Below, in pieces: positions 4,222 through 43,296 of a stretch of 64,000 bases of DNA. The stretch spans positions 124,001 through 188,000 of IMG/VR virus record IMGVR_UViG_3300037010_001227. The stretch is one strand, 5' to 3'. Position 1 is the first letter of the stretch, and the number at the start of each line of letters is the position of its first letter. The translations under genes and the position numbers were made by a program. A model generated the notes under the pieces. It worked only from the letters and a program-made list of their open reading frames with translations, was not told the origin of the DNA and did no database searches.

Positions 4222-4557
4222 ATGACAGACCCAATAAATCTTCACCTTGCATTAACTGCTTGTTTCTGTTCTATCAAGCAGATTTTGAGTTATAACACTG
4301 ATGACATTGTGAGTAATGCTACCAGTGAGAAGTTTGATTCAGACACAAGAAAGGCTATCTCTTATATAAGAGATAAAACTTCTTCGATTGAATATATTTC
4401 TAGAGAAACTGTAGTTTTCTTACTCAGAAAATATTACAGAGAAGAACATAACAGTGAAGGTGAAAACTTCGCAAAAGTCTTTGATTGCATGTTTACAAAG
4501 CTTAGTGTGGATACTTTTTACTGGGGATGTGTAGAATTAAGTAGTGAAGCTCAATAG
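4222..4557 (+). CDS. hypothetical protein
   Basis: SD AGGAG then ATG 4222; stop codon falls inside the 5' end of tRNA-Ile. Confidence 0.65.
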   Translation: MTDPINLHLALTACFCSIKQILSYNTDDIVSNATSEKFDSDTRKAISYIRDKTSSIEYISRETVVFLLRKYYREEHNSEGENFAKVFDCMFTKLSVDTFYWGCVELSSEAQ

Positions 4558-4623
4558 CTCAGTTGGTAGAGCAAGGCACTTATAACGCCTAGGTCGATGG
4601 TTCAATCCCATCTTGAGCTACCA
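4548..4623 (+). tRNA. tRNA-Ile(UAU)
   Basis: Acceptor AGCTCAA/TTGAGCT, D-arm GCTC..GAGC, anticodon loop CTTATAA, T-loop TTCAATC, discriminator A, CCA. Confidence 0.9.
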
Positions 4624-6240: not shown

Positions 6241-6327
6241 CCCAGCATGGCGTAATTGGTAGCCGCAGAAGTCTTAAAAACTTCTTCCTGTAAAGGAGTC
6301 CCGATTCGACTTCGGGTGCTGGGACCA
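6241..6327 (+). tRNA. tRNA-Leu(UAA)
   Basis: Acceptor CCCAGCA/TGCTGGG, anticodon stem GAAGT/ACTTC with loop CTTAAAA, long variable arm TCCT-GTAA-AGGA, T-arm CCCGA-TTCGACT-TCGGG, CCA. Confidence 0.9.
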
Positions 6328-9374: not shown

Positions 9375-10058
9375 ATTAAGATAATTTCGAAGTTTCATGA
9401 CTACTACGATAGCCTGGTAAATTTTGGTGGAAGTGATAACACTAAAGTATACAATAGAACTACGTATACTTTGGAATCCTATCAATTTCCTCCGAATCAT
9501 AATAAAAGACTACCTGACTTGTATTTAATGTTTGATGGTCATAGATTTGTTTCTTCTTACTATTACAGCAAGAATAATAACGTTAAAATTGAAAGTTTTG
9601 TTGTTATCTTTACTGGTATCTCTTATACTGGAATCAGAGTAGAATTCATTAAGCCTGAACAAAGTGAAATAACTTACCATTACACTTTCGAAAGTCTTTT
9701 TAAGTATCTCAACAATATTGATCCTACTATTATTGAGAAACAAAAGAAACCTTTCATAGAGTTTTATGAGGGCAACAAATCTGAGTGTGCAAGAGATTGG
9801 GCAATCAACAACAAGATTATCATCGCTACTGATTGCACTGGACTTGGTAGTAGAAATACTTGGATTGCTAATCCTCAACTAGATAAGATTAGCTTTCAGA
9901 AAGTTCTTGATCCTTTCACAGCATTTCAAGAGTTGGAAATGTGGATTGGTGGAGTTCTGACTGATAACAAAGAGATCAGTCAAGTTTCCAATGATATTAG
10001 AATTCAGCAAGCTGGATTTGATCTTAAAACATCTTTCAGAAAACCAAAACAGTTTTAA
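9375..10058 (+). CDS. hypothetical phage protein, probable ATT start
   Basis: SD GGGAGG 9364-9369, in-frame ATT 9375 (IKIISKFHDYYDS...), continuous with track ORF 9471-10058. Confidence 0.65.
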   Translation: MKIISKFHDYYDSLVNFGGSDNTKVYNRTTYTLESYQFPPNHNKRLPDLYLMFDGHRFVSSYYYSKNNNVKIESFVVIFTGISYTGIRVEFIKPEQSEITYHYTFESLFKYLNNIDPTIIEKQKKPFIEFYEGNKSECARDWAINNKIIIATDCTGLGSRNTWIANPQLDKISFQKVLDPFTAFQELEMWIGGVLTDNKEISQVSNDIRIQQAGFDLKTSFRKPKQF

Positions 10059-10106
10059 TCTATTGAAAGATGGACTAATTAATTTTTAGTCCATCATTGA
10101 GTAGAT
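10058..10106 (+). repeat. intergenic imperfect hairpin, family member 7
   Basis: ATCTATTGAAA-GATGGACTAA / TTAATTT / TTAGTCCATC-ATTGAGTAGAT; ends 2 nt before the tRNA-like gene. Confidence 0.8.
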
Positions 10107-10108
10107 AT

Positions 10109-10191
10109 GTGCCGTTAGCCGATTTCGCCTTCTAAGCGATTATTCGTAGTTGGAGCTGCAAACGGGGGTTCGAGTCCCTCACGGCACACCA
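10109..10191 (+). tRNA. atypical tRNA-Arg(UCU)-like RNA lacking the D-arm
   Basis: Acceptor GTGCCGT/ACGGCAC+ACCA; anticodon arm TCGC-CTTCTAA-GCGA; T-arm GGGGG-TTCGAGT-CCCTC; too few nt for a D-arm; extra stem GTAGT-TGGA-GCTGC. Confidence 0.75.
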
Positions 10192-10291
10192 GTTCTTCTA
10201 AATGTCATGGAGTATTATTTTTGAACTATACGCAAGGATGCTGTATTTAGTTTTTTATAGGCGAAAACCAATTAAGTCTTTAAGGAGTCAT

Positions 10292-29249: not shown

Positions 29250-30254
29250 ATGAAGATTGCTGCTGATAAGATTGTATTTAGTGGCCTTGCTGGTTCCAGA
29301 CTTTATGGAGTAGCTAATGCTAACTCGGATACAGACATTAAATGCGTGTTTGCACATAGTTTAGATGGTCTTATTTTGAATGAAAAAGACACGGATAGAA
29401 TAAAAGATCCTTCTGTAAATAGTGAGACTGAGTGGTTTTCAATTAGAAAGTTCTCCAGCCTTCTTGCACAGAACCAGACTGTAGCAATTGAACTTCTATT
29501 TATTCCACAGTCTCATATTATTACTACATCAGCAGCTTGGGAAGAACTTCTTGAGAATAGAGATAAGATTATCTCCAAAAACATTATGCCTTTTGTAGGA
29601 TATGCACGAAATCAGGCTCGTCTATATTCTGTAAAGGGTGATAGACTTGAATTTCTGCATGAAATTAAAAAACTTGTAGAACAATTCAAGAAAACTTGTG
29701 TTGCTTTAGAACCAACTTGTATTGGAATTACAGAATATCTAAATACATTTGATATTCTTGATACATGGATTGATAAGGATTTTATTTCCTTTGAAACAAG
29801 AAAAACACCTAATGGTAAAGATAACAAAATGGTGATGATTCTTGGGCGAGGGTTTGAAGAATTTTGCACTCCAGACCTCTGGTTAGAACGAATCGAAACT
29901 CAAATCAATAAATACGGTGAACGTGCTGAAATGGCTGAAGAAAACAAAGGCCATGATTTAAAGGCAACTTACCATGCTGTTAGAATCATTCAAGAAGCAA
30001 TGGATCTTCTTGATACTGGAATATTAGAGTTTCCGCGACCAGAAGCTCAGTTACTTCGTGAGATTCGTAATGGTAAGTATGATTATCGTTACACTTGTGA
30101 TCTAATTCAGGCTATGACTAAAGAATTAGAAATCAAAATGACAGCATCTACTTTACGAGAAACTCCAGACAAGAATTGGTTAACTTCTTGGGCACTTCGT
30201 TATCAACGTGCTTATGTTGTAGATGATTTTGAAGTTATCGCTAAAATCAATTAG
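29250..30254 (+). CDS. Pol-beta-fold nucleotidyltransferase (T4 NrdC.11 / RlaP-like)
   Basis: AGSRLYG...SDTD, FVGYARNQ, HDLKATYHAVR, LEFPRP. Confidence 0.85.
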   Translation: MKIAADKIVFSGLAGSRLYGVANANSDTDIKCVFAHSLDGLILNEKDTDRIKDPSVNSETEWFSIRKFSSLLAQNQTVAIELLFIPQSHIITTSAAWEELLENRDKIISKNIMPFVGYARNQARLYSVKGDRLEFLHEIKKLVEQFKKTCVALEPTCIGITEYLNTFDILDTWIDKDFISFETRKTPNGKDNKMVMILGRGFEEFCTPDLWLERIETQINKYGERAEMAEENKGHDLKATYHAVRIIQEAMDLLDTGILEFPRPEAQLLREIRNGKYDYRYTCDLIQAMTKELEIKMTASTLRETPDKNWLTSWALRYQRAYVVDDFEVIAKIN

Positions 30255-32786: not shown

Positions 32787-33791
32787 TTGATGAATGTTAC
32801 GCAGAACTTGATCAACAACATCCTTAAAGCTAAGACAGTTTACTATCATTCTGGTTGTCCAGACGGTATTATTGCAAGGGAGTTTATTTTTCGAACATTA
32901 ACTGAAGGTATGAATAAACCTTGCACGGCTGTGTTTGAACCATATTTTCCTGGTAATAAGTTGACTGTAACTGACAACTGTGTTTTCATTGATGTTGCTC
33001 CAATTCAAGAGCAATATGAAGACTTTTTAAAAGCTGGTAGTGTTATTATGGACCACCATATTACCAATAAGCCAAGCAATTATGATGAGCTGGATATTGC
33101 TTATCCAGATCAACTTAGATTTGGTCTGAATGCAAACAATGAGAGTGGAGCCCAACTTGCTTTTGAATGTTTGGAGTTTCACCTAAAAGCAAAGGGCTAT
33201 ATTGGCTTTACAGGTAGTATTGAACGACATATTGCCAATCTTATTGCGATTGGTGATTGTTGGGATACTAAAAGTCCTTTTTTTGAAAAAGCCAGATTCC
33301 TTGGTCAATACATTGCAATGTATGGGAATGATTATGACAAAGGTATCCCTGGACAAAACTTCATTGAACAAGCCTACGAATATGGTAGACTAAGAAAGAG
33401 AAGTTTTGAGCGGACGGTCAAGAAAGTTATTATCCAACAGTTTTCAATGAGTGTTCCTGAAAGAGTAATGAAAATTGCTTTTATGAACACTCATGATGGA
33501 ATATCTGATGTGTCTGAAATACTTAGAATAGAACAGAATATTGATCTAATTGTTGGTTGGATTATCCAAAAGATACTGATTGACGGTGTTCCAACTGACG
33601 TAATTTCTTACTCACTTCGATCTAATGACAAGTTTGACTGTTCTAAGTTTGCTAAATACTGCAATATTCGTGGTGGAGGTCATCCAAAAGCAGCTGGATT
33701 TATTATCAACCTATCTGAAACAAACAGACTTAATGGTATGGATTATTTTATGCAACTTCTAGCTACTTACTCACCTAAAAGTTATGTTTAA
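32787..33791 (+). CDS. DHH/DHHA1 phosphoesterase (nanoRNase-like)
   Basis: YHSGCPDG, FID, MDHH, YSLRS, GGGHPKAAG. Confidence 0.85.
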   Translation: MMNVTQNLINNILKAKTVYYHSGCPDGIIAREFIFRTLTEGMNKPCTAVFEPYFPGNKLTVTDNCVFIDVAPIQEQYEDFLKAGSVIMDHHITNKPSNYDELDIAYPDQLRFGLNANNESGAQLAFECLEFHLKAKGYIGFTGSIERHIANLIAIGDCWDTKSPFFEKARFLGQYIAMYGNDYDKGIPGQNFIEQAYEYGRLRKRSFERTVKKVIIQQFSMSVPERVMKIAFMNTHDGISDVSEILRIEQNIDLIVGWIIQKILIDGVPTDVISYSLRSNDKFDCSKFAKYCNIRGGGHPKAAGFIINLSETNRLNGMDYFMQLLATYSPKSYV

Positions 33792-41790: not shown

Positions 41791-41823
41791 GGTTTGTTTC
41801 ATATATTTATTAATTGGAGTCTA

Positions 41824-43296
41824 ATGATGGTAAATATTCCTAAAGTTCTTAATGAAAATTATTGTGCGAGAGTAGTAGAAATTGAAAAAATTGTAGCTCT
41901 TCCCAATCGGGATAAGATTGTTGGAGCTTTGATTTTTGGCAACCAAGTTATTGTCAGTAAAGATACCAAGGTAGGTGATGTTGGTATCTTCTTTCCAGTA
42001 GAAACTGCACTCTCTGCCGAGTTTATGGCTTTCAACAATTTACATCAAGACAATACCCTTAACAACGATCCTTCTAAGAAAGGATTTTTTGGTTCTAAGG
42101 GACGTGTAAAGTGTCAGAAGTTCGGTGGTCATAAATCTGAAGGTTTCTTTATCCCTCTTGATTCTCTTGAGTATGTGTTTCATGCTCAAATTACAAAAGA
42201 TGATCTTCCAGTTGGAACCAAGTTTGAAATACTGGATGGTAAAGAAATCTGTAAGAAGTATGTGATTAAAGACTCTCGAACTCCAAGAGAACCTGGATCT
42301 AAGCAGAAGAAATCTGTTAAACTGAGTCGTCTTGTAGATAATCAGTTCAGACTACATTTTGATACCTTAAATCTTCGGATGAATGCTCATAAGCTAAATC
42401 CGAATGACTATATCAGTATTTCCAGTAAGTATCATGGAACTTCTTGGGTCGTAGGTAAGGTGTTAGTAAAAGACCCAATCTGGCAACATACTCTTGCTAT
42501 GAAGATTACTGGTATTGATCTTTACAAGAACAAGAAGATAGCAAAATATCTTAAGTATTTGATTAAGCCAGCTGAAAAGTTTCAGAACTATCTGATTGGA
42601 ACTCTACTAAATGTAGACAACAATTCAAAGCCTTTTTATGATGTGATTTGGTCTTCTCGTAAGGTAGTTAAAAATGCCTTTGCCAATCCTAATCCAGTTC
42701 ATTACTACGGTATGGATATCTGGGGTGAAATTGCAGAACATGTGAAAGATCATATTCCTGCCGGTATCACTCTTTACGGTGAGTGTGTTGGTTATCTCCC
42801 TAATGGATCAGCAATTCAGTCAAGTGAAGGTAAGTGTTTTGACTATGGTTGTGAACCAGGAACTTATAAACTCATCGTATATCGTATTACTTCTACGAAT
42901 GCAGAAGGTAAAGTATTTGAGTTCTCTTGGCCACAAATTCTTGAGTTCTGCAATAGGATAAGCCCCTATATTGGTTCTGGAACTTGTGTAGGTCTTGAAA
43001 CTCCTAATACTTACTATTACGGTAAGGCTAAGGATTATGCACCACAGATTCCAATTGAAACTCATTGGAATGAAAACTTCCTTGCCAAACTTGAGAAAGA
43101 TTTTATGAAAGATGCCGATTGTCCTTTCTGTAAAAATGTAGTTCCTGAAGAGGGAATTATCATTTCTAAAGAAACTCTCTACGAGAGGGAATCTTTCAAA
43201 CTTAAGAACTTTAGATTCCTTAATAAAGAATCTGAAGAACTTGATAAGGAAGTAGTTGATATTGAAACTTCTCAATCTGAAGAAGACCCTGTGTAG
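41824..43296 (+). CDS. RNA ligase (Rnl2/DRB0094-like) with N-terminal OB/tRNA-binding-like domain
   Basis: Motif I SKYHGTS, III LYGE, IV EEGII, V FKLK; N-terminal VALPNRDKI..VGDVGIFFP. Confidence 0.85.
   Translation: MMVNIPKVLNENYCARVVEIEKIVALPNRDKIVGALIFGNQVIVSKDTKVGDVGIFFPVETALSAEFMAFNNLHQDNTLNNDPSKKGFFGSKGRVKCQKFGGHKSEGFFIPLDSLEYVFHAQITKDDLPVGTKFEILDGKEICKKYVIKDSRTPREPGSKQKKSVKLSRLVDNQFRLHFDTLNLRMNAHKLNPNDYISISSKYHGTSWVVGKVLVKDPIWQHTLAMKITGIDLYKNKKIAKYLKYLIKPAEKFQNYLIGTLLNVDNNSKPFYDVIWSSRKVVKNAFANPNPVHYYGMDIWGEIAEHVKDHIPAGITLYGECVGYLPNGSAIQSSEGKCFDYGCEPGTYKLIVYRITSTNAEGKVFEFSWPQILEFCNRISPYIGSGTCVGLETPNTYYYGKAKDYAPQIPIETHWNENFLAKLEKDFMKDADCPFCKNVVPEEGIIISKETLYERESFKLKNFRFLNKESEELDKEVVDIETSQSEEDPV

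What the first reader, a model, noticed from the sequence alone, without database searches (positions are those of the whole stretch)
10109..10191. D-arm-less tRNA-Arg(UCU)-like RNA with an extra hairpin after the anticodon arm
Seen: a perfect 7-bp acceptor stem, encoded ACCA, a canonical T-loop (TTCGAGT) and an anticodon loop CTTCTAA. Only ~8-9 nt (TAGCCGATT) link the acceptor and anticodon stems, so there is no D-arm. A 23-nt variable region carries the stem-loop GTAGT-TGGA-GCTGC, whose AGTTGGA resembles a D-loop placed on the wrong side. Established: D-arm-less tRNAs are typical of animal mitochondria, and bacterial ArgRS normally needs D-loop A20. Inference: this is a rearranged but functional tRNA, a decoy for anticodon nucleases, or a tRNA mimic with a non-translational role. 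The intact stems argue against simple decay.
Basis: partly seen in the sequence, partly recalled or inferred. Interest (0 to 1): 0.72.

Follow-up and report, generated by a model that had tools for sequence, protein, structure and literature searches.

The report
Rewired phage arginine tRNA family
The 83-base gene is a real member of a widespread, mostly unannotated family of phage arginine tRNAs in which the D-stem is not lost but is formed by long-range pairing around the anticodon arm, a tRNA wiring that I could not find described anywhere.

Summary
Two structural claims do not hold. The RNA is not simply D-arm-less, and the "extra hairpin" is not conserved.

I found 50 distinct homologues, 81-84 nt long. 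They come from Vibrio, Caulobacter, Brevundimonas, Microbacterium and Pseudomonas phages, from IMG/VR contigs, and from three bacterial genomes. All carry arginine anticodons only: UCU 32, ACG 12, UCG 5, CCG 1.

Covariation supports a 4-bp D-stem. The linker (10-13) pairs with two short segments 3' of the anticodon arm, so the anticodon arm sits inside the D-stem. An 8-nt bulge, U-A-R-N-N-G-G-A, plays the part of the D-loop. It keeps G18 G19, an A20-like base (the main bacterial ArgRS determinant) and a covarying 15:48-like pair.

A sister type with isoleucine anticodons has GGU in the bulge and A73, which matches isoleucine identity rules.

In this 213-kb phage the gene is the only tRNA-Arg, and AGA is the commonest arginine codon (47%).

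The best reading is a functional AGA-decoding tRNA-Arg with a rewired core. Expression and charging are untested. Why phages keep this fold is unknown; escape from tRNA-targeting nucleases is a plausible guess.

The parts
10109..10115 (+). acceptor stem, 5' strand (GTGCCGT)
   Evidence: Pairs 7/7 with 10181-10187. All seven pairs show compensatory changes across 41 homologues.
10116..10117 (+). U8 A9 connector
   Evidence: Invariant in all 41 aligned members.
10118..10121 (+). D-stem 5' strand (G10 C11 C12 G13)
   Evidence: Position 10 pairs with 10156 (A:U 23, G:C 18, none unpaired). Position 11 pairs with 10155 (C:G 36, U:A 2, U:G 2, other 1). Position 12 pairs with 10146 (C:G invariant). 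Position 13 pairs with 10145 (G:C 36, A:U 3, U:A 2, plus C:G in L020b)..
10122..10122 (+). spacer base (N14') before the anticodon arm
   Evidence: Forms a standard pair (Watson-Crick or G:U) with the base at 10144 in 24 of 41 members.
10123..10141 (+). anticodon arm: a 6-layer stem (4 Watson-Crick pairs plus 2 U.U in this copy) and the 7-nt loop CTTCTAA; anticodon TCT at 10131-10133
   Evidence: All six stem pairs covary. C35 and A37 are invariant and U33 nearly so. Anticodons in 50 members are UCU, ACG, UCG and CCG only.
10142..10144 (+). 3-nt spacer (ATT) after the anticodon stem
   Evidence: The first base, A, is nearly invariant; the others vary.
10145..10146 (+). D-stem 3' strand, first half (C22' G23')
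   Evidence: Pairs with 10121 and 10120. RNAalifold finds these two pairs independently. Compensatory changes are seen at 13:22'.
10147..10154 (+). D-loop-like 8-nt bulge U-A-G-U-U-G-G-A (A14-, R15-, G18-, G19- and A20/21-like bases)
   Evidence: U, A, GG and A are invariant. The R base at 10149 covaries with the base at 10163, like a Levitt 15:48 pair: A:U 34, G:G 5, G:C 2. GGA occurs in 50/50 Arg-type members and GGU in 10/10 Ile-type members.
10155..10156 (+). D-stem 3' strand, second half (G24' C25')
   Evidence: Pairs with 10119 and 10118. The 10:25' pair switched between A:U and G:C about 12 times on a tree built without these columns, and no intermediate was seen.
10157..10163 (+). 7-nt connector U-G-C-A-A-A-C to the T stem; the last base is the 48-like partner of 10149
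   Evidence: U, G and AAA are conserved. The 42:57 column association is.
10164..10180 (+). T arm (GGGGG / TTCGAGT / CCCTC)
   Evidence: Canonical T-loop; 100% of cells are paired across the family.
10181..10187 (+). acceptor stem, 3' strand
10188..10191 (+). discriminator A73 and encoded CCA
   Evidence: N73 is G in 30, A in 15 and U in 5 of 50 members. CCA is encoded in 35 of 50.

Best explanation
The gene at 10109-10191(+) encodes a working tRNA-Arg(UCU) that reads AGA, and probably AGG, for the phage. It belongs to a conserved, mainly phage-borne family of tRNAs with a rewired core.

Shown:
- The acceptor, anticodon and T helices are canonical.
- A 4-bp D-stem forms between linker bases 10-13 and two dinucleotides that lie 3' of the anticodon arm. 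The anticodon arm is therefore nested inside the D-stem.
- An 8-nt bulge between the two halves of the D-stem 3' strand carries the D-loop signature: A14, R15, G18 G19 and A20/21.

Inferred:
- The D-stem stacks on the anticodon stem to give a limb of about 11 layers, close to the canonical 10.
- The bulge makes the usual elbow and core contacts (U8:A14, 15:48, G18/G19 with the T-loop), so the RNA still folds into an L shape.
- Host ArgRS charges it through the A20-like base, C35, U36 and A73.
- EF-Tu and the ribosome accept it.
- It supplies AGA decoding to an AT-rich phage genome.

Why this wiring is kept is not shown. My guess is that it lets the tRNA escape host or competitor enzymes that recognise or cut canonical tRNA-Arg while it stays chargeable.
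For: 1. Family: 50 distinct Arg-type members of 81-84 nt were found with three DNA patterns, BLAST and a covariance model. Family members score 54-100 bits with model R1, while ordinary tRNAs in the same 569 kb score 45 or less.
2. Structure: 97.9% of cells are paired, against 41-50% when partners are slid. The long-range pairs 10:25', 11:24' and 13:22' all show compensatory changes. About 12 independent A:U/G:C switches occurred at 10:25'.
3. Arg identity: only the anticodons UCU, ACG, UCG and CCG occur. C35 and A37 are invariant, GGA is present in 50/50, and N73 is mostly G or A. These are the bacterial Arg determinants A20, C35, U/G36 and A/G73 (PMC9976931).
4. The Ile-anticodon sister type has GGU and A73 in 10/10 members, found partly with a pattern that did not specify the anticodon. 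This matches the Ile determinants U20/U21 and A73.
5. Genomic setting: members lie inside tRNA arrays of isolated phages. In Ccr10 the member sits between tRNA-Gln and tRNA-Arg-TCT. In PG07 it lies 7 nt after tRNA-Ile.
6. In this genome (95% complete by CheckV) it is the only tRNA-Arg among 17 tRNA genes. AGA makes up 47% of Arg codons.
Against: - There is no expression, processing or aminoacylation evidence. The window comes from a microbial-mat metagenome with no matching RNA run.
- Nearest-neighbour energies do not favour the long-range D-stem, which costs +2.9 kcal/mol on average relative to the three-helix core. In this copy the competing local hairpin is worth about -5 kcal/mol. The model therefore rests on covariation plus assumed tertiary contacts.
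- This copy's anticodon stem has only 4 Watson-Crick pairs plus two U.U.
- Some phages carry a canonical tRNA-Arg of the same anticodon right next to a family member (L054, L064). That hints at a role that is not simply redundant decoding.
- The 3D arrangement is my inference; no model was computed (one search was not folded).
Confidence: 0.68

Rival explanations
1. Decoy or sponge. The RNA mimics tRNA-Arg closely enough to bind or absorb a tRNA-Arg-directed nuclease, or another tRNA-binding defence protein, but it does not itself serve in translation.
For: Some phages carry a family member beside a canonical tRNA-Arg with the same anticodon (L054, L064). That suggests a non-redundant role. 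The anticodon loop is strictly conserved as an Arg loop. Phage tRNAs are known to counter tRNA-targeting defences (PMC10264068, PMC11464382).
Against: A decoy for an anticodon nuclease would not need several features that are conserved here. These are a fully compensated acceptor stem, a discriminator restricted mostly to G or A, an encoded CCA in 35/50 members, an A20-like base, and an isotype-specific switch to GGU plus A73 in the Ile type. In this phage it is the only tRNA-Arg, although AGA is the main Arg codon.
Confidence: 0.14
2. One reading: a truly D-arm-less tRNA with a 9-nt connector and a stem-loop in the variable region, like a class II tRNA that has lost its D arm.
For: In this copy the hairpin is part of the minimum-energy structure and is worth about -5 kcal/mol. 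Two of its pairs, U.G and A-U, are invariant across the family and so cannot be tested.
Against: The other three hairpin pairs are unpaired in 29, 16 and 9 of 41 homologues. The hairpin is stabilising in only 14 of 41. The bases it would use (G24', Y25') covary perfectly with linker bases 11 and 10 instead.
Confidence: 0.1
3. A decaying tRNA pseudogene, or a chance tRNA-like sequence, with no function.
For: ARAGORN does not call it. Rfam finds it only just above threshold. Its anticodon stem is weak.
Against: There are 50 distinct homologues in unrelated phage groups. They show no length drift (81-84 nt), fully compensated helices and invariant functional bases.
Confidence: 0.02

Closest known systems
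Canonical bacterial and phage tRNA-Arg (for example E. coli tRNA-Arg ICG/UCU, or phage T4 tRNA-Arg UCU)
   Same: - 7-bp acceptor stem, 5-bp T stem and a TTCGA T-loop.
- 7-nt anticodon loop with U33 and A37.
- Arg anticodons.
- C35, U/G36, an A20-like base after G18 G19, and A/G73.
- U8, A14-like and 15:48-like bases.
- Location in phage tRNA arrays.
   Different: - The order of elements along the chain differs. The anticodon arm lies between the two strands of the D-stem instead of after it.
- The D-loop is a bulge within the D-stem 3' strand.
- The core is a three-way rather than a four-way junction.
- A 7-nt connector replaces base 26 plus the variable loop.
- Standard tRNA finders miss it or miscall its anticodon.
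D-armless mitochondrial tRNA-Ser(AGY/AGN), including the UCU-anticodon forms of invertebrates (PMC7609411, PMC9427863)
   Same: There is no local D hairpin between the acceptor and anticodon stems. The anticodon limb is extended. Some members share the UCU anticodon.
   Different: - The mitochondrial forms have lost the D-loop and the G18 G19 elbow contacts, and they have degenerate T-loops.
- This family keeps a D-stem (long-range), a D-loop equivalent and a fully canonical T-loop.
- It carries Arg rather than Ser identity features.
- It is encoded by phages of bacteria.
Class II tRNAs and allo-tRNAs with long variable arms (PMC5389517)
   Same: Length is above 80 nt, with extra nucleotides between the anticodon stem and the T stem. 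Both are found in phages of Alphaproteobacteria, among others.
   Different: - Those tRNAs keep a normal D hairpin, and their extra nucleotides form a real variable stem-loop.
- Allo-tRNAs have 8/4 or 9/3 acceptor/T branches.
- Here the branch is 7/5, and the extra nucleotides are the D-loop plus the D-stem 3' strand.
Permuted or split tRNA genes (Cyanidioschyzon, Nanoarchaeum)
   Same: The gene order of tRNA elements departs from the canonical order.
   Different: In those cases processing restores a canonical mature tRNA. Here the covariation supports the rearranged order itself as the folded, selected molecule. A circular permutation cannot produce this order.

Membership tests
tRNA (Rfam RF00005 / canonical cloverleaf) | 7-bp acceptor stem closing the molecule, with a discriminator and a 3' CCA | tested here: met
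   7/7 pairs, A73 and an encoded CCA. All seven pairs covary across the family.
tRNA (Rfam RF00005 / canonical cloverleaf) | T arm: a 5-bp stem and a 7-nt T-loop with T54 T55 C56 R57 A58 | tested here: met
   GGGGG / TTCGAGT / CCCTC. 100% paired in 41 members.
tRNA (Rfam RF00005 / canonical cloverleaf) | Anticodon arm with a 7-nt loop, U33 and purine 37 | tested here: met
   The loop is CTTCTAA. A37 is invariant and U33 nearly so. In this copy the stem is 4 Watson-Crick pairs plus 2 U.U.
tRNA (Rfam RF00005 / canonical cloverleaf) | Local D hairpin (10-13 paired with 22-25, closing the D-loop) placed 5' of the anticodon arm | tested here: not met
   The Rfam alignment deletes the D arm, leaving 5 nt in place of 15. 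ARAGORN finds no cloverleaf. The D-stem partners lie 3' of the anticodon arm.
tRNA (Rfam RF00005 / canonical cloverleaf) | Score at or above the curated gathering threshold (29 bits) | tested here: met
   32.1 bits. The hit was missed in the default whole-window scan with Rfam's filters.
Bacterial tRNA-Arg identity set (A20, C35, U/G36, A/G73; PMC9976931) | C35 and U or G at position 36 | tested here: met
   The anticodon here is TCT. All 50 members have C35 with U36 or G36.
Bacterial tRNA-Arg identity set (A20, C35, U/G36, A/G73; PMC9976931) | A20 in the D-loop, directly after G18 G19 | tested here: inconclusive
   An invariant A follows the invariant GG in the bulge in 50/50 Arg-type members, while Ile-type members have U. 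Whether ArgRS sees it as A20 in three dimensions cannot be judged from sequence.
Bacterial tRNA-Arg identity set (A20, C35, U/G36, A/G73; PMC9976931) | Aminoacylation with arginine by ArgRS | not testable with these tools
   The complex-prediction job was not folded, and no charging data exist.
Metazoan mitochondrial D-armless tRNA | Loss of the D-stem and of the G18 G19 / T-loop elbow interaction, with a relaxed T-loop | tested here: not met
   A long-range D-stem is supported by covariation. GG is invariant and the T-loop is canonical.
Class II (long variable arm) tRNA | A conserved stem-loop between the anticodon stem and the T stem, in addition to a normal D arm | tested here: not met
   The candidate hairpin is unpaired at three of its five pairs in 9-29 of 41 members. 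There is no local D arm.

The most novel reading that the evidence does not exclude
Phages of many bacterial phyla maintain a separate structural class of tRNAs. So far it is seen for Arg (four anticodons) and for Ile (UAU and GAU). In this class the anticodon arm is nested in the D-stem and the core is a three-way junction.

The fold may be kept because it stays chargeable and ribosome-competent while being a poor substrate for host or rival tRNA-targeting nucleases, or other enzymes, that read the canonical D-arm and core. That would be a structural form of immune evasion, as opposed to the anticodon-loop point changes already described.
Probability: 0.25. Interest if true: 0.92.

Novelty: new variant of a known kind. 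Interest (0 to 1): 0.82.

Why it matters
The cloverleaf order of helices is among the most conserved features in biology. Known departures are losses of arms (mitochondria), changed stem lengths (tRNA-Sec, allo-tRNAs), or gene-level permutations that processing undoes.

A family that keeps every tertiary signature of the tRNA core but connects the strands differently would be a natural experiment. [quoted passage not shown]

There are practical consequences too:
- These genes are missed or miscalled by ARAGORN, and they are left unannotated in GenBank records of isolated phages such as Ccr10, Pumpernickel, Zooman, Boevelstad and PG07. Phage tRNA repertoires and codon-compensation analyses are therefore incomplete.
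- If the fold protects against tRNA-directed defences, it adds a new mechanism to the phage-host arms race.
- It could also supply an orthogonal scaffold for tRNA engineering.

Tried and rejected
- **Canonical cloverleaf.** ARAGORN in standard and relaxed modes finds nothing. In mitochondrial mode it gives only a 57-nt partial fold that ignores the true acceptor stem. For the homologues it forces 'Arg(ccg)', 'Thr(ggt)' or '???' with poor D and anticodon stems. Rejected.
- **First hairpin as D arm and second hairpin as a 4-nt-loop anticodon arm.** Rejected, because the first loop is a perfect Arg anticodon loop in all members and the second hairpin is not conserved.
- **Near or distant BLAST of the 2.5-kb neighbourhood against phages.** No match.
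- **Exact T-arm plus acceptor pattern in IMG/VR.** No match.
- **RlpA-neighbour search in IMG/VR.** No relatives.
- **Relatives search.** Not available for a virus record.
- **ArgRS-RNA complex prediction.** Not folded, so it gives no evidence.
- **Read laying.** No RNA run holds this phage. The contigs only showed a second family member in the same mats and a close relative in wastewater.
- **Thermodynamic support for the long-range D-stem.** Not obtained.
- **Loose anticodon-agnostic pattern.** It returned mostly chance hits. Only those with a T arm and a paired acceptor stem were kept.
- **Nine literature searches** and three papers searched by term found no description of this architecture. 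The library lacks most subscription journals, so prior description cannot be excluded.

Full report
**1. The observation**

The stretch 10109-10191(+) reads as follows:
- a 7-bp acceptor stem, GTGCCGT with ACGGCAC
- a 7-nt linker, TAGCCGA
- an anticodon arm with loop CTTCTAA and anticodon TCT at 10131-10133
- 22 further nucleotides
- a canonical T arm, GGGGG / TTCGAGT / CCCTC
- A73 and an encoded CCA.

ARAGORN does not call it in standard or relaxed mode. Rfam's tRNA model misses it in the default whole-window scan. In a short-range scan and in a whole-genome scan it scores 32.1 bits against a threshold of 29. That alignment deletes the D arm (5 nt where the model has 15) and treats 20 nt before the T stem as an insertion.

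So the listed features are real, and the sequence is tRNA-like beyond chance.

**2. Source and setting**

The window is bases 124001-188000 of a 213,189-bp virus record. CheckV rates the record 95% complete. It was assembled from a microbial-mat metagenome and has 34% G+C.

Its proteins are only 30-47% identical to those of known phages, mostly T4-like ones. No near relative is held in the phage collection.

The genome has 16 other tRNA genes and none of them is a tRNA-Arg. In 155 long ORFs, AGA makes up 47% of arginine codons.

The neighbours of the gene are an ORF of unknown function upstream and an RlpA/DPBB lipoprotein gene downstream.

**3. Homologues**

A low-stringency BLAST of the 91-nt region gave partial hits covering the segment between the anticodon arm and the T arm. 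Two of these had the same overall layout. They are in Vibrio phage vB_VpS_PG07, where the gene is unannotated and lies 7 nt after a tRNA-Ile, and in Brevundimonas phage Bajun, where it is annotated tRNA-Arg.

Three degenerate patterns built from the shared motif recovered dozens of IMG/VR contigs. One pattern run over 185,579 species genomes found only three true members, all in Alphaproteobacteria. A further BLAST found unannotated copies in Caulobacter phages Ccr10, Ccr2 and Ccr29, Microbacterium phages Pumpernickel and Zooman, and Pseudomonas phage Boevelstad.

I aligned 41 distinct sequences (A1). All are 82-84 nt long, and the only length differences are in the bulge described below.

A covariance model built from A1 scores the window's copy at 91.1 bits. 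In 569 kb of fetched loci it separates family members (54-100 bits) from ordinary tRNAs (45 bits or less). It also revealed further members.

**4. Structure**

On A1 the acceptor, anticodon and T helices are supported by abundant compensatory change.

The new result concerns the linker U8 A9 R10 Y11 C12 G13.
- Base 10 pairs with the Y of the conserved G-G-A-G-Y motif: A:U in 23 sequences, G:C in 18, never unpaired.
- Base 11 pairs with the preceding G: C:G 36, U:A 2, U:G 2, one mismatch.
- Base 13 pairs with the first base of the conserved C-G-U-A motif: G:C 36, A:U 3, U:A 2, and C:G in an extra member.
- Base 12 pairs with the second base of that motif: C:G, invariant.

The columns that covary were not fixed together by any one search pattern.

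Overall, 97.9% of cells are paired, against 41-50% when partners are slid by 1-3 columns. On a tree built without these columns, the 10:25' pair switches state about 12 times with no intermediate. RNAalifold finds the 12:23' and 13:22' pairs unaided.

The result is a 4-bp D-stem that encloses the anticodon arm. Its 3' strand is interrupted by an 8-nt bulge, U-A-R-N-N-G-G-A. The bulge varies in length by one nucleotide in a few members, as real D-loops do.

The R in the bulge is perfectly associated with the base just before the T stem: A:U 34, G:G 5, G:C 2. This is the pattern of the Levitt 15:48 tertiary pair.

U8, the A14-like A, the GG and the following A are all invariant. The molecule is therefore not D-arm-less. 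It has a D-stem and a D-loop equivalent, but with different strand connectivity.

It is unpaired at three of its five pairs in 29, 16 and 9 of 41 sequences, and it is stabilising in only 14 of 41.

There is a caveat. Nearest-neighbour energies do not favour the long-range stem (mean +2.9 kcal/mol). In the window's copy the local hairpin is worth about -5 kcal/mol. The model therefore rests on covariation and on presumed tertiary contacts.

**5. Identity**

Among 50 distinct Arg-type members the anticodons are UCU (32), ACG (12), UCG (5) and CCG (1). C35 and A37 are invariant. The base after GG is A in all 50. N73 is G in 30, A in 15 and U in 5. CCA is encoded in 35.

These match the bacterial arginine determinants A20, C35, U/G36 and A/G73 (PMC9976931).

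The covariance model also found a sister type with isoleucine anticodons. A pattern that required GGU in the bulge but said nothing about the anticodon found five more. All ten have UAU or GAU anticodons, U after GG, and A73. They also have a single covarying 10:25'-like pair (C:G, U:A, G:C).

Bacterial isoleucine identity includes U20/U21 and A73. The bulge base therefore tracks the anticodon's amino acid. This is what one expects if synthetases read the bulge as a D-loop.

**6. Genomic context of members**

Members usually sit in tRNA arrays and often lie next to canonical tRNA-Arg genes with other anticodons. In two contigs (L054, L064) a canonical tRNA-Arg(UCU) lies beside a rewired one. 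One 362-kb contig has three Arg-type members and one Ile-type member within 1 kb.

ARAGORN misses nearly all of them, or gives wrong anticodons.

Five of 41 members have an exact TATAAATA motif 7-10 nt upstream, which resembles a T4-type late promoter. This resemblance is from my own knowledge and was not tested.

The Asticcacaulis chromosomal copy has C33 instead of U33 and lies between ordinary genes. That genome also has two canonical tRNA-Arg(ACG) genes. The bacterial copies therefore look accessory.

**7. Explanation**

The best reading is that this is the phage's own tRNA-Arg(UCU). It is chargeable by host ArgRS and used to read AGA, the phage's commonest arginine codon.

I infer that the D-stem stacks on the anticodon stem to give a limb of about 11 layers (2 + 3 + 6), against 10 in canonical tRNA. 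I also infer that the bulge makes the U8:A14, 15:48 and G18/G19-to-T-loop contacts, which would preserve the L shape with a three-way junction. None of this was modelled or measured.

Why the wiring is kept is unknown. Phage tRNAs are now known to counter tRNA-targeting defences (PMC10264068, PMC11464382). The side-by-side occurrence with canonical isoacceptors suggests a non-redundant property, and resistance to such enzymes is a reasonable guess.

A pure decoy role is less likely, because synthetase identity features outside the anticodon loop are conserved. It is not excluded.

**8. Novelty**

Nine full-text searches and three papers searched by term found no description of a tRNA with the anticodon arm nested in the D-stem, nor of D-arm-less tRNAs in phages. 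Rfam has no separate family for it.

The library lacks most subscription journals, so I cannot exclude an earlier report. I rate this as a new variant of a known kind (tRNA), and of high interest.

Noticed in passing
L064:6155-6238(-), L051:4806-4888(+), L051:4498-4577(+), L054:923-1007(-), L010:7511-7594(+), and L124, L138, L159, L160, L217: A sister type of rewired tRNA with isoleucine anticodons (UAU and GAU). Its linker is one base shorter (TA-N-CGA). It has a single covarying 10:25'-like pair, GGU instead of GGA in the D-loop-like bulge, and A73 in all ten members.
   Followed up: partly
G000:C1:62184-71579 (outside the window, minus strand): The phage's other tRNA cluster holds several unusual genes. 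These are an 87-nt tRNA-Thr(UGU) with a long variable arm and G73, a Ser-like tRNA with anticodon ACU, an amber-suppressor-type tRNA(CUA), and an 83-nt tRNA-Asn with a 13-nt variable loop. Two low-scoring tRNAs were missed by ARAGORN: CAU at 71510-71579 and Tyr GUA at 66836-66917.
   Followed up: partly
window 10069-10095: A perfect 10-bp inverted repeat (GATGGACTAA / TTAGTCCATC, with a 7-nt loop) lies between the stop codon of the upstream ORF and the tRNA 5' end, 13 nt before it. It has no T-run. It could be a processing or termination hairpin.
   Followed up: no
window 41794-43296, 29250-30254, 32787-33791: The window also encodes an RNA ligase (phrog_968), a nucleotidyltransferase (phrog_388, annotated as tRNA nucleotidyltransferase in some phages) and a DHH phosphoesterase. 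This set is reminiscent of tRNA repair and maturation. In Pseudomonas phage Boevelstad the rewired tRNA-Arg lies just downstream of an RNA ligase gene (L089).
   Followed up: no
window 6241-6327 and 4548-4623: ARAGORN calls a tRNA-Leu(UAA), but it is not reported by Rfam at gathering threshold in the whole-window scan. The tRNA-Ile(UAU) has an A.C mismatch at the base of its anticodon stem.
   Followed up: no
runs X1 and X4 laid on window 10115-10177: The same microbial-mat samples hold an 85-nt contig at high depth that is a second, different family member. Its acceptor stem is GCACCCT / AGGGTGT, and it has 8 differences over 63 nt. A wastewater run (X5) holds a close relative of this phage that includes the tRNA. 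X5 also holds another contig whose alignment skips 9939-10268, so some relatives may lack or replace this segment.
   Followed up: partly
L026:1949-2042(-): A 94-nt variant with an ACG anticodon loop appears to carry an additional hairpin between the D-loop-like segment and the T arm (40 bits with the family model).
   Followed up: no
L078:3757-3840(-) = Asticcacaulis sp. AC460 contig 25: A chromosomal copy of the Arg(ACG) type sits next to a canonical tRNA, between an RTX-repeat protein gene and an amylase/pullulanase gene. It has C33 instead of U33, so it may be a relic of phage origin.
   Followed up: partly
alignment A1, columns 1 and 81: G1.U72 wobble pairs close the acceptor stem in 15 of 50 Arg-type members, which is an unusual feature for elongator tRNAs.
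   Followed up: no
window 9471-10058: The upstream ORF (195 aa, no Pfam hit) is 27-33% identical to regions of Ralstonia and Rhizobium phage genomes. In the Rhizobium phages the matching region overlaps a hypothetical protein and a Seg-like homing endonuclease annotation.
   Followed up: no
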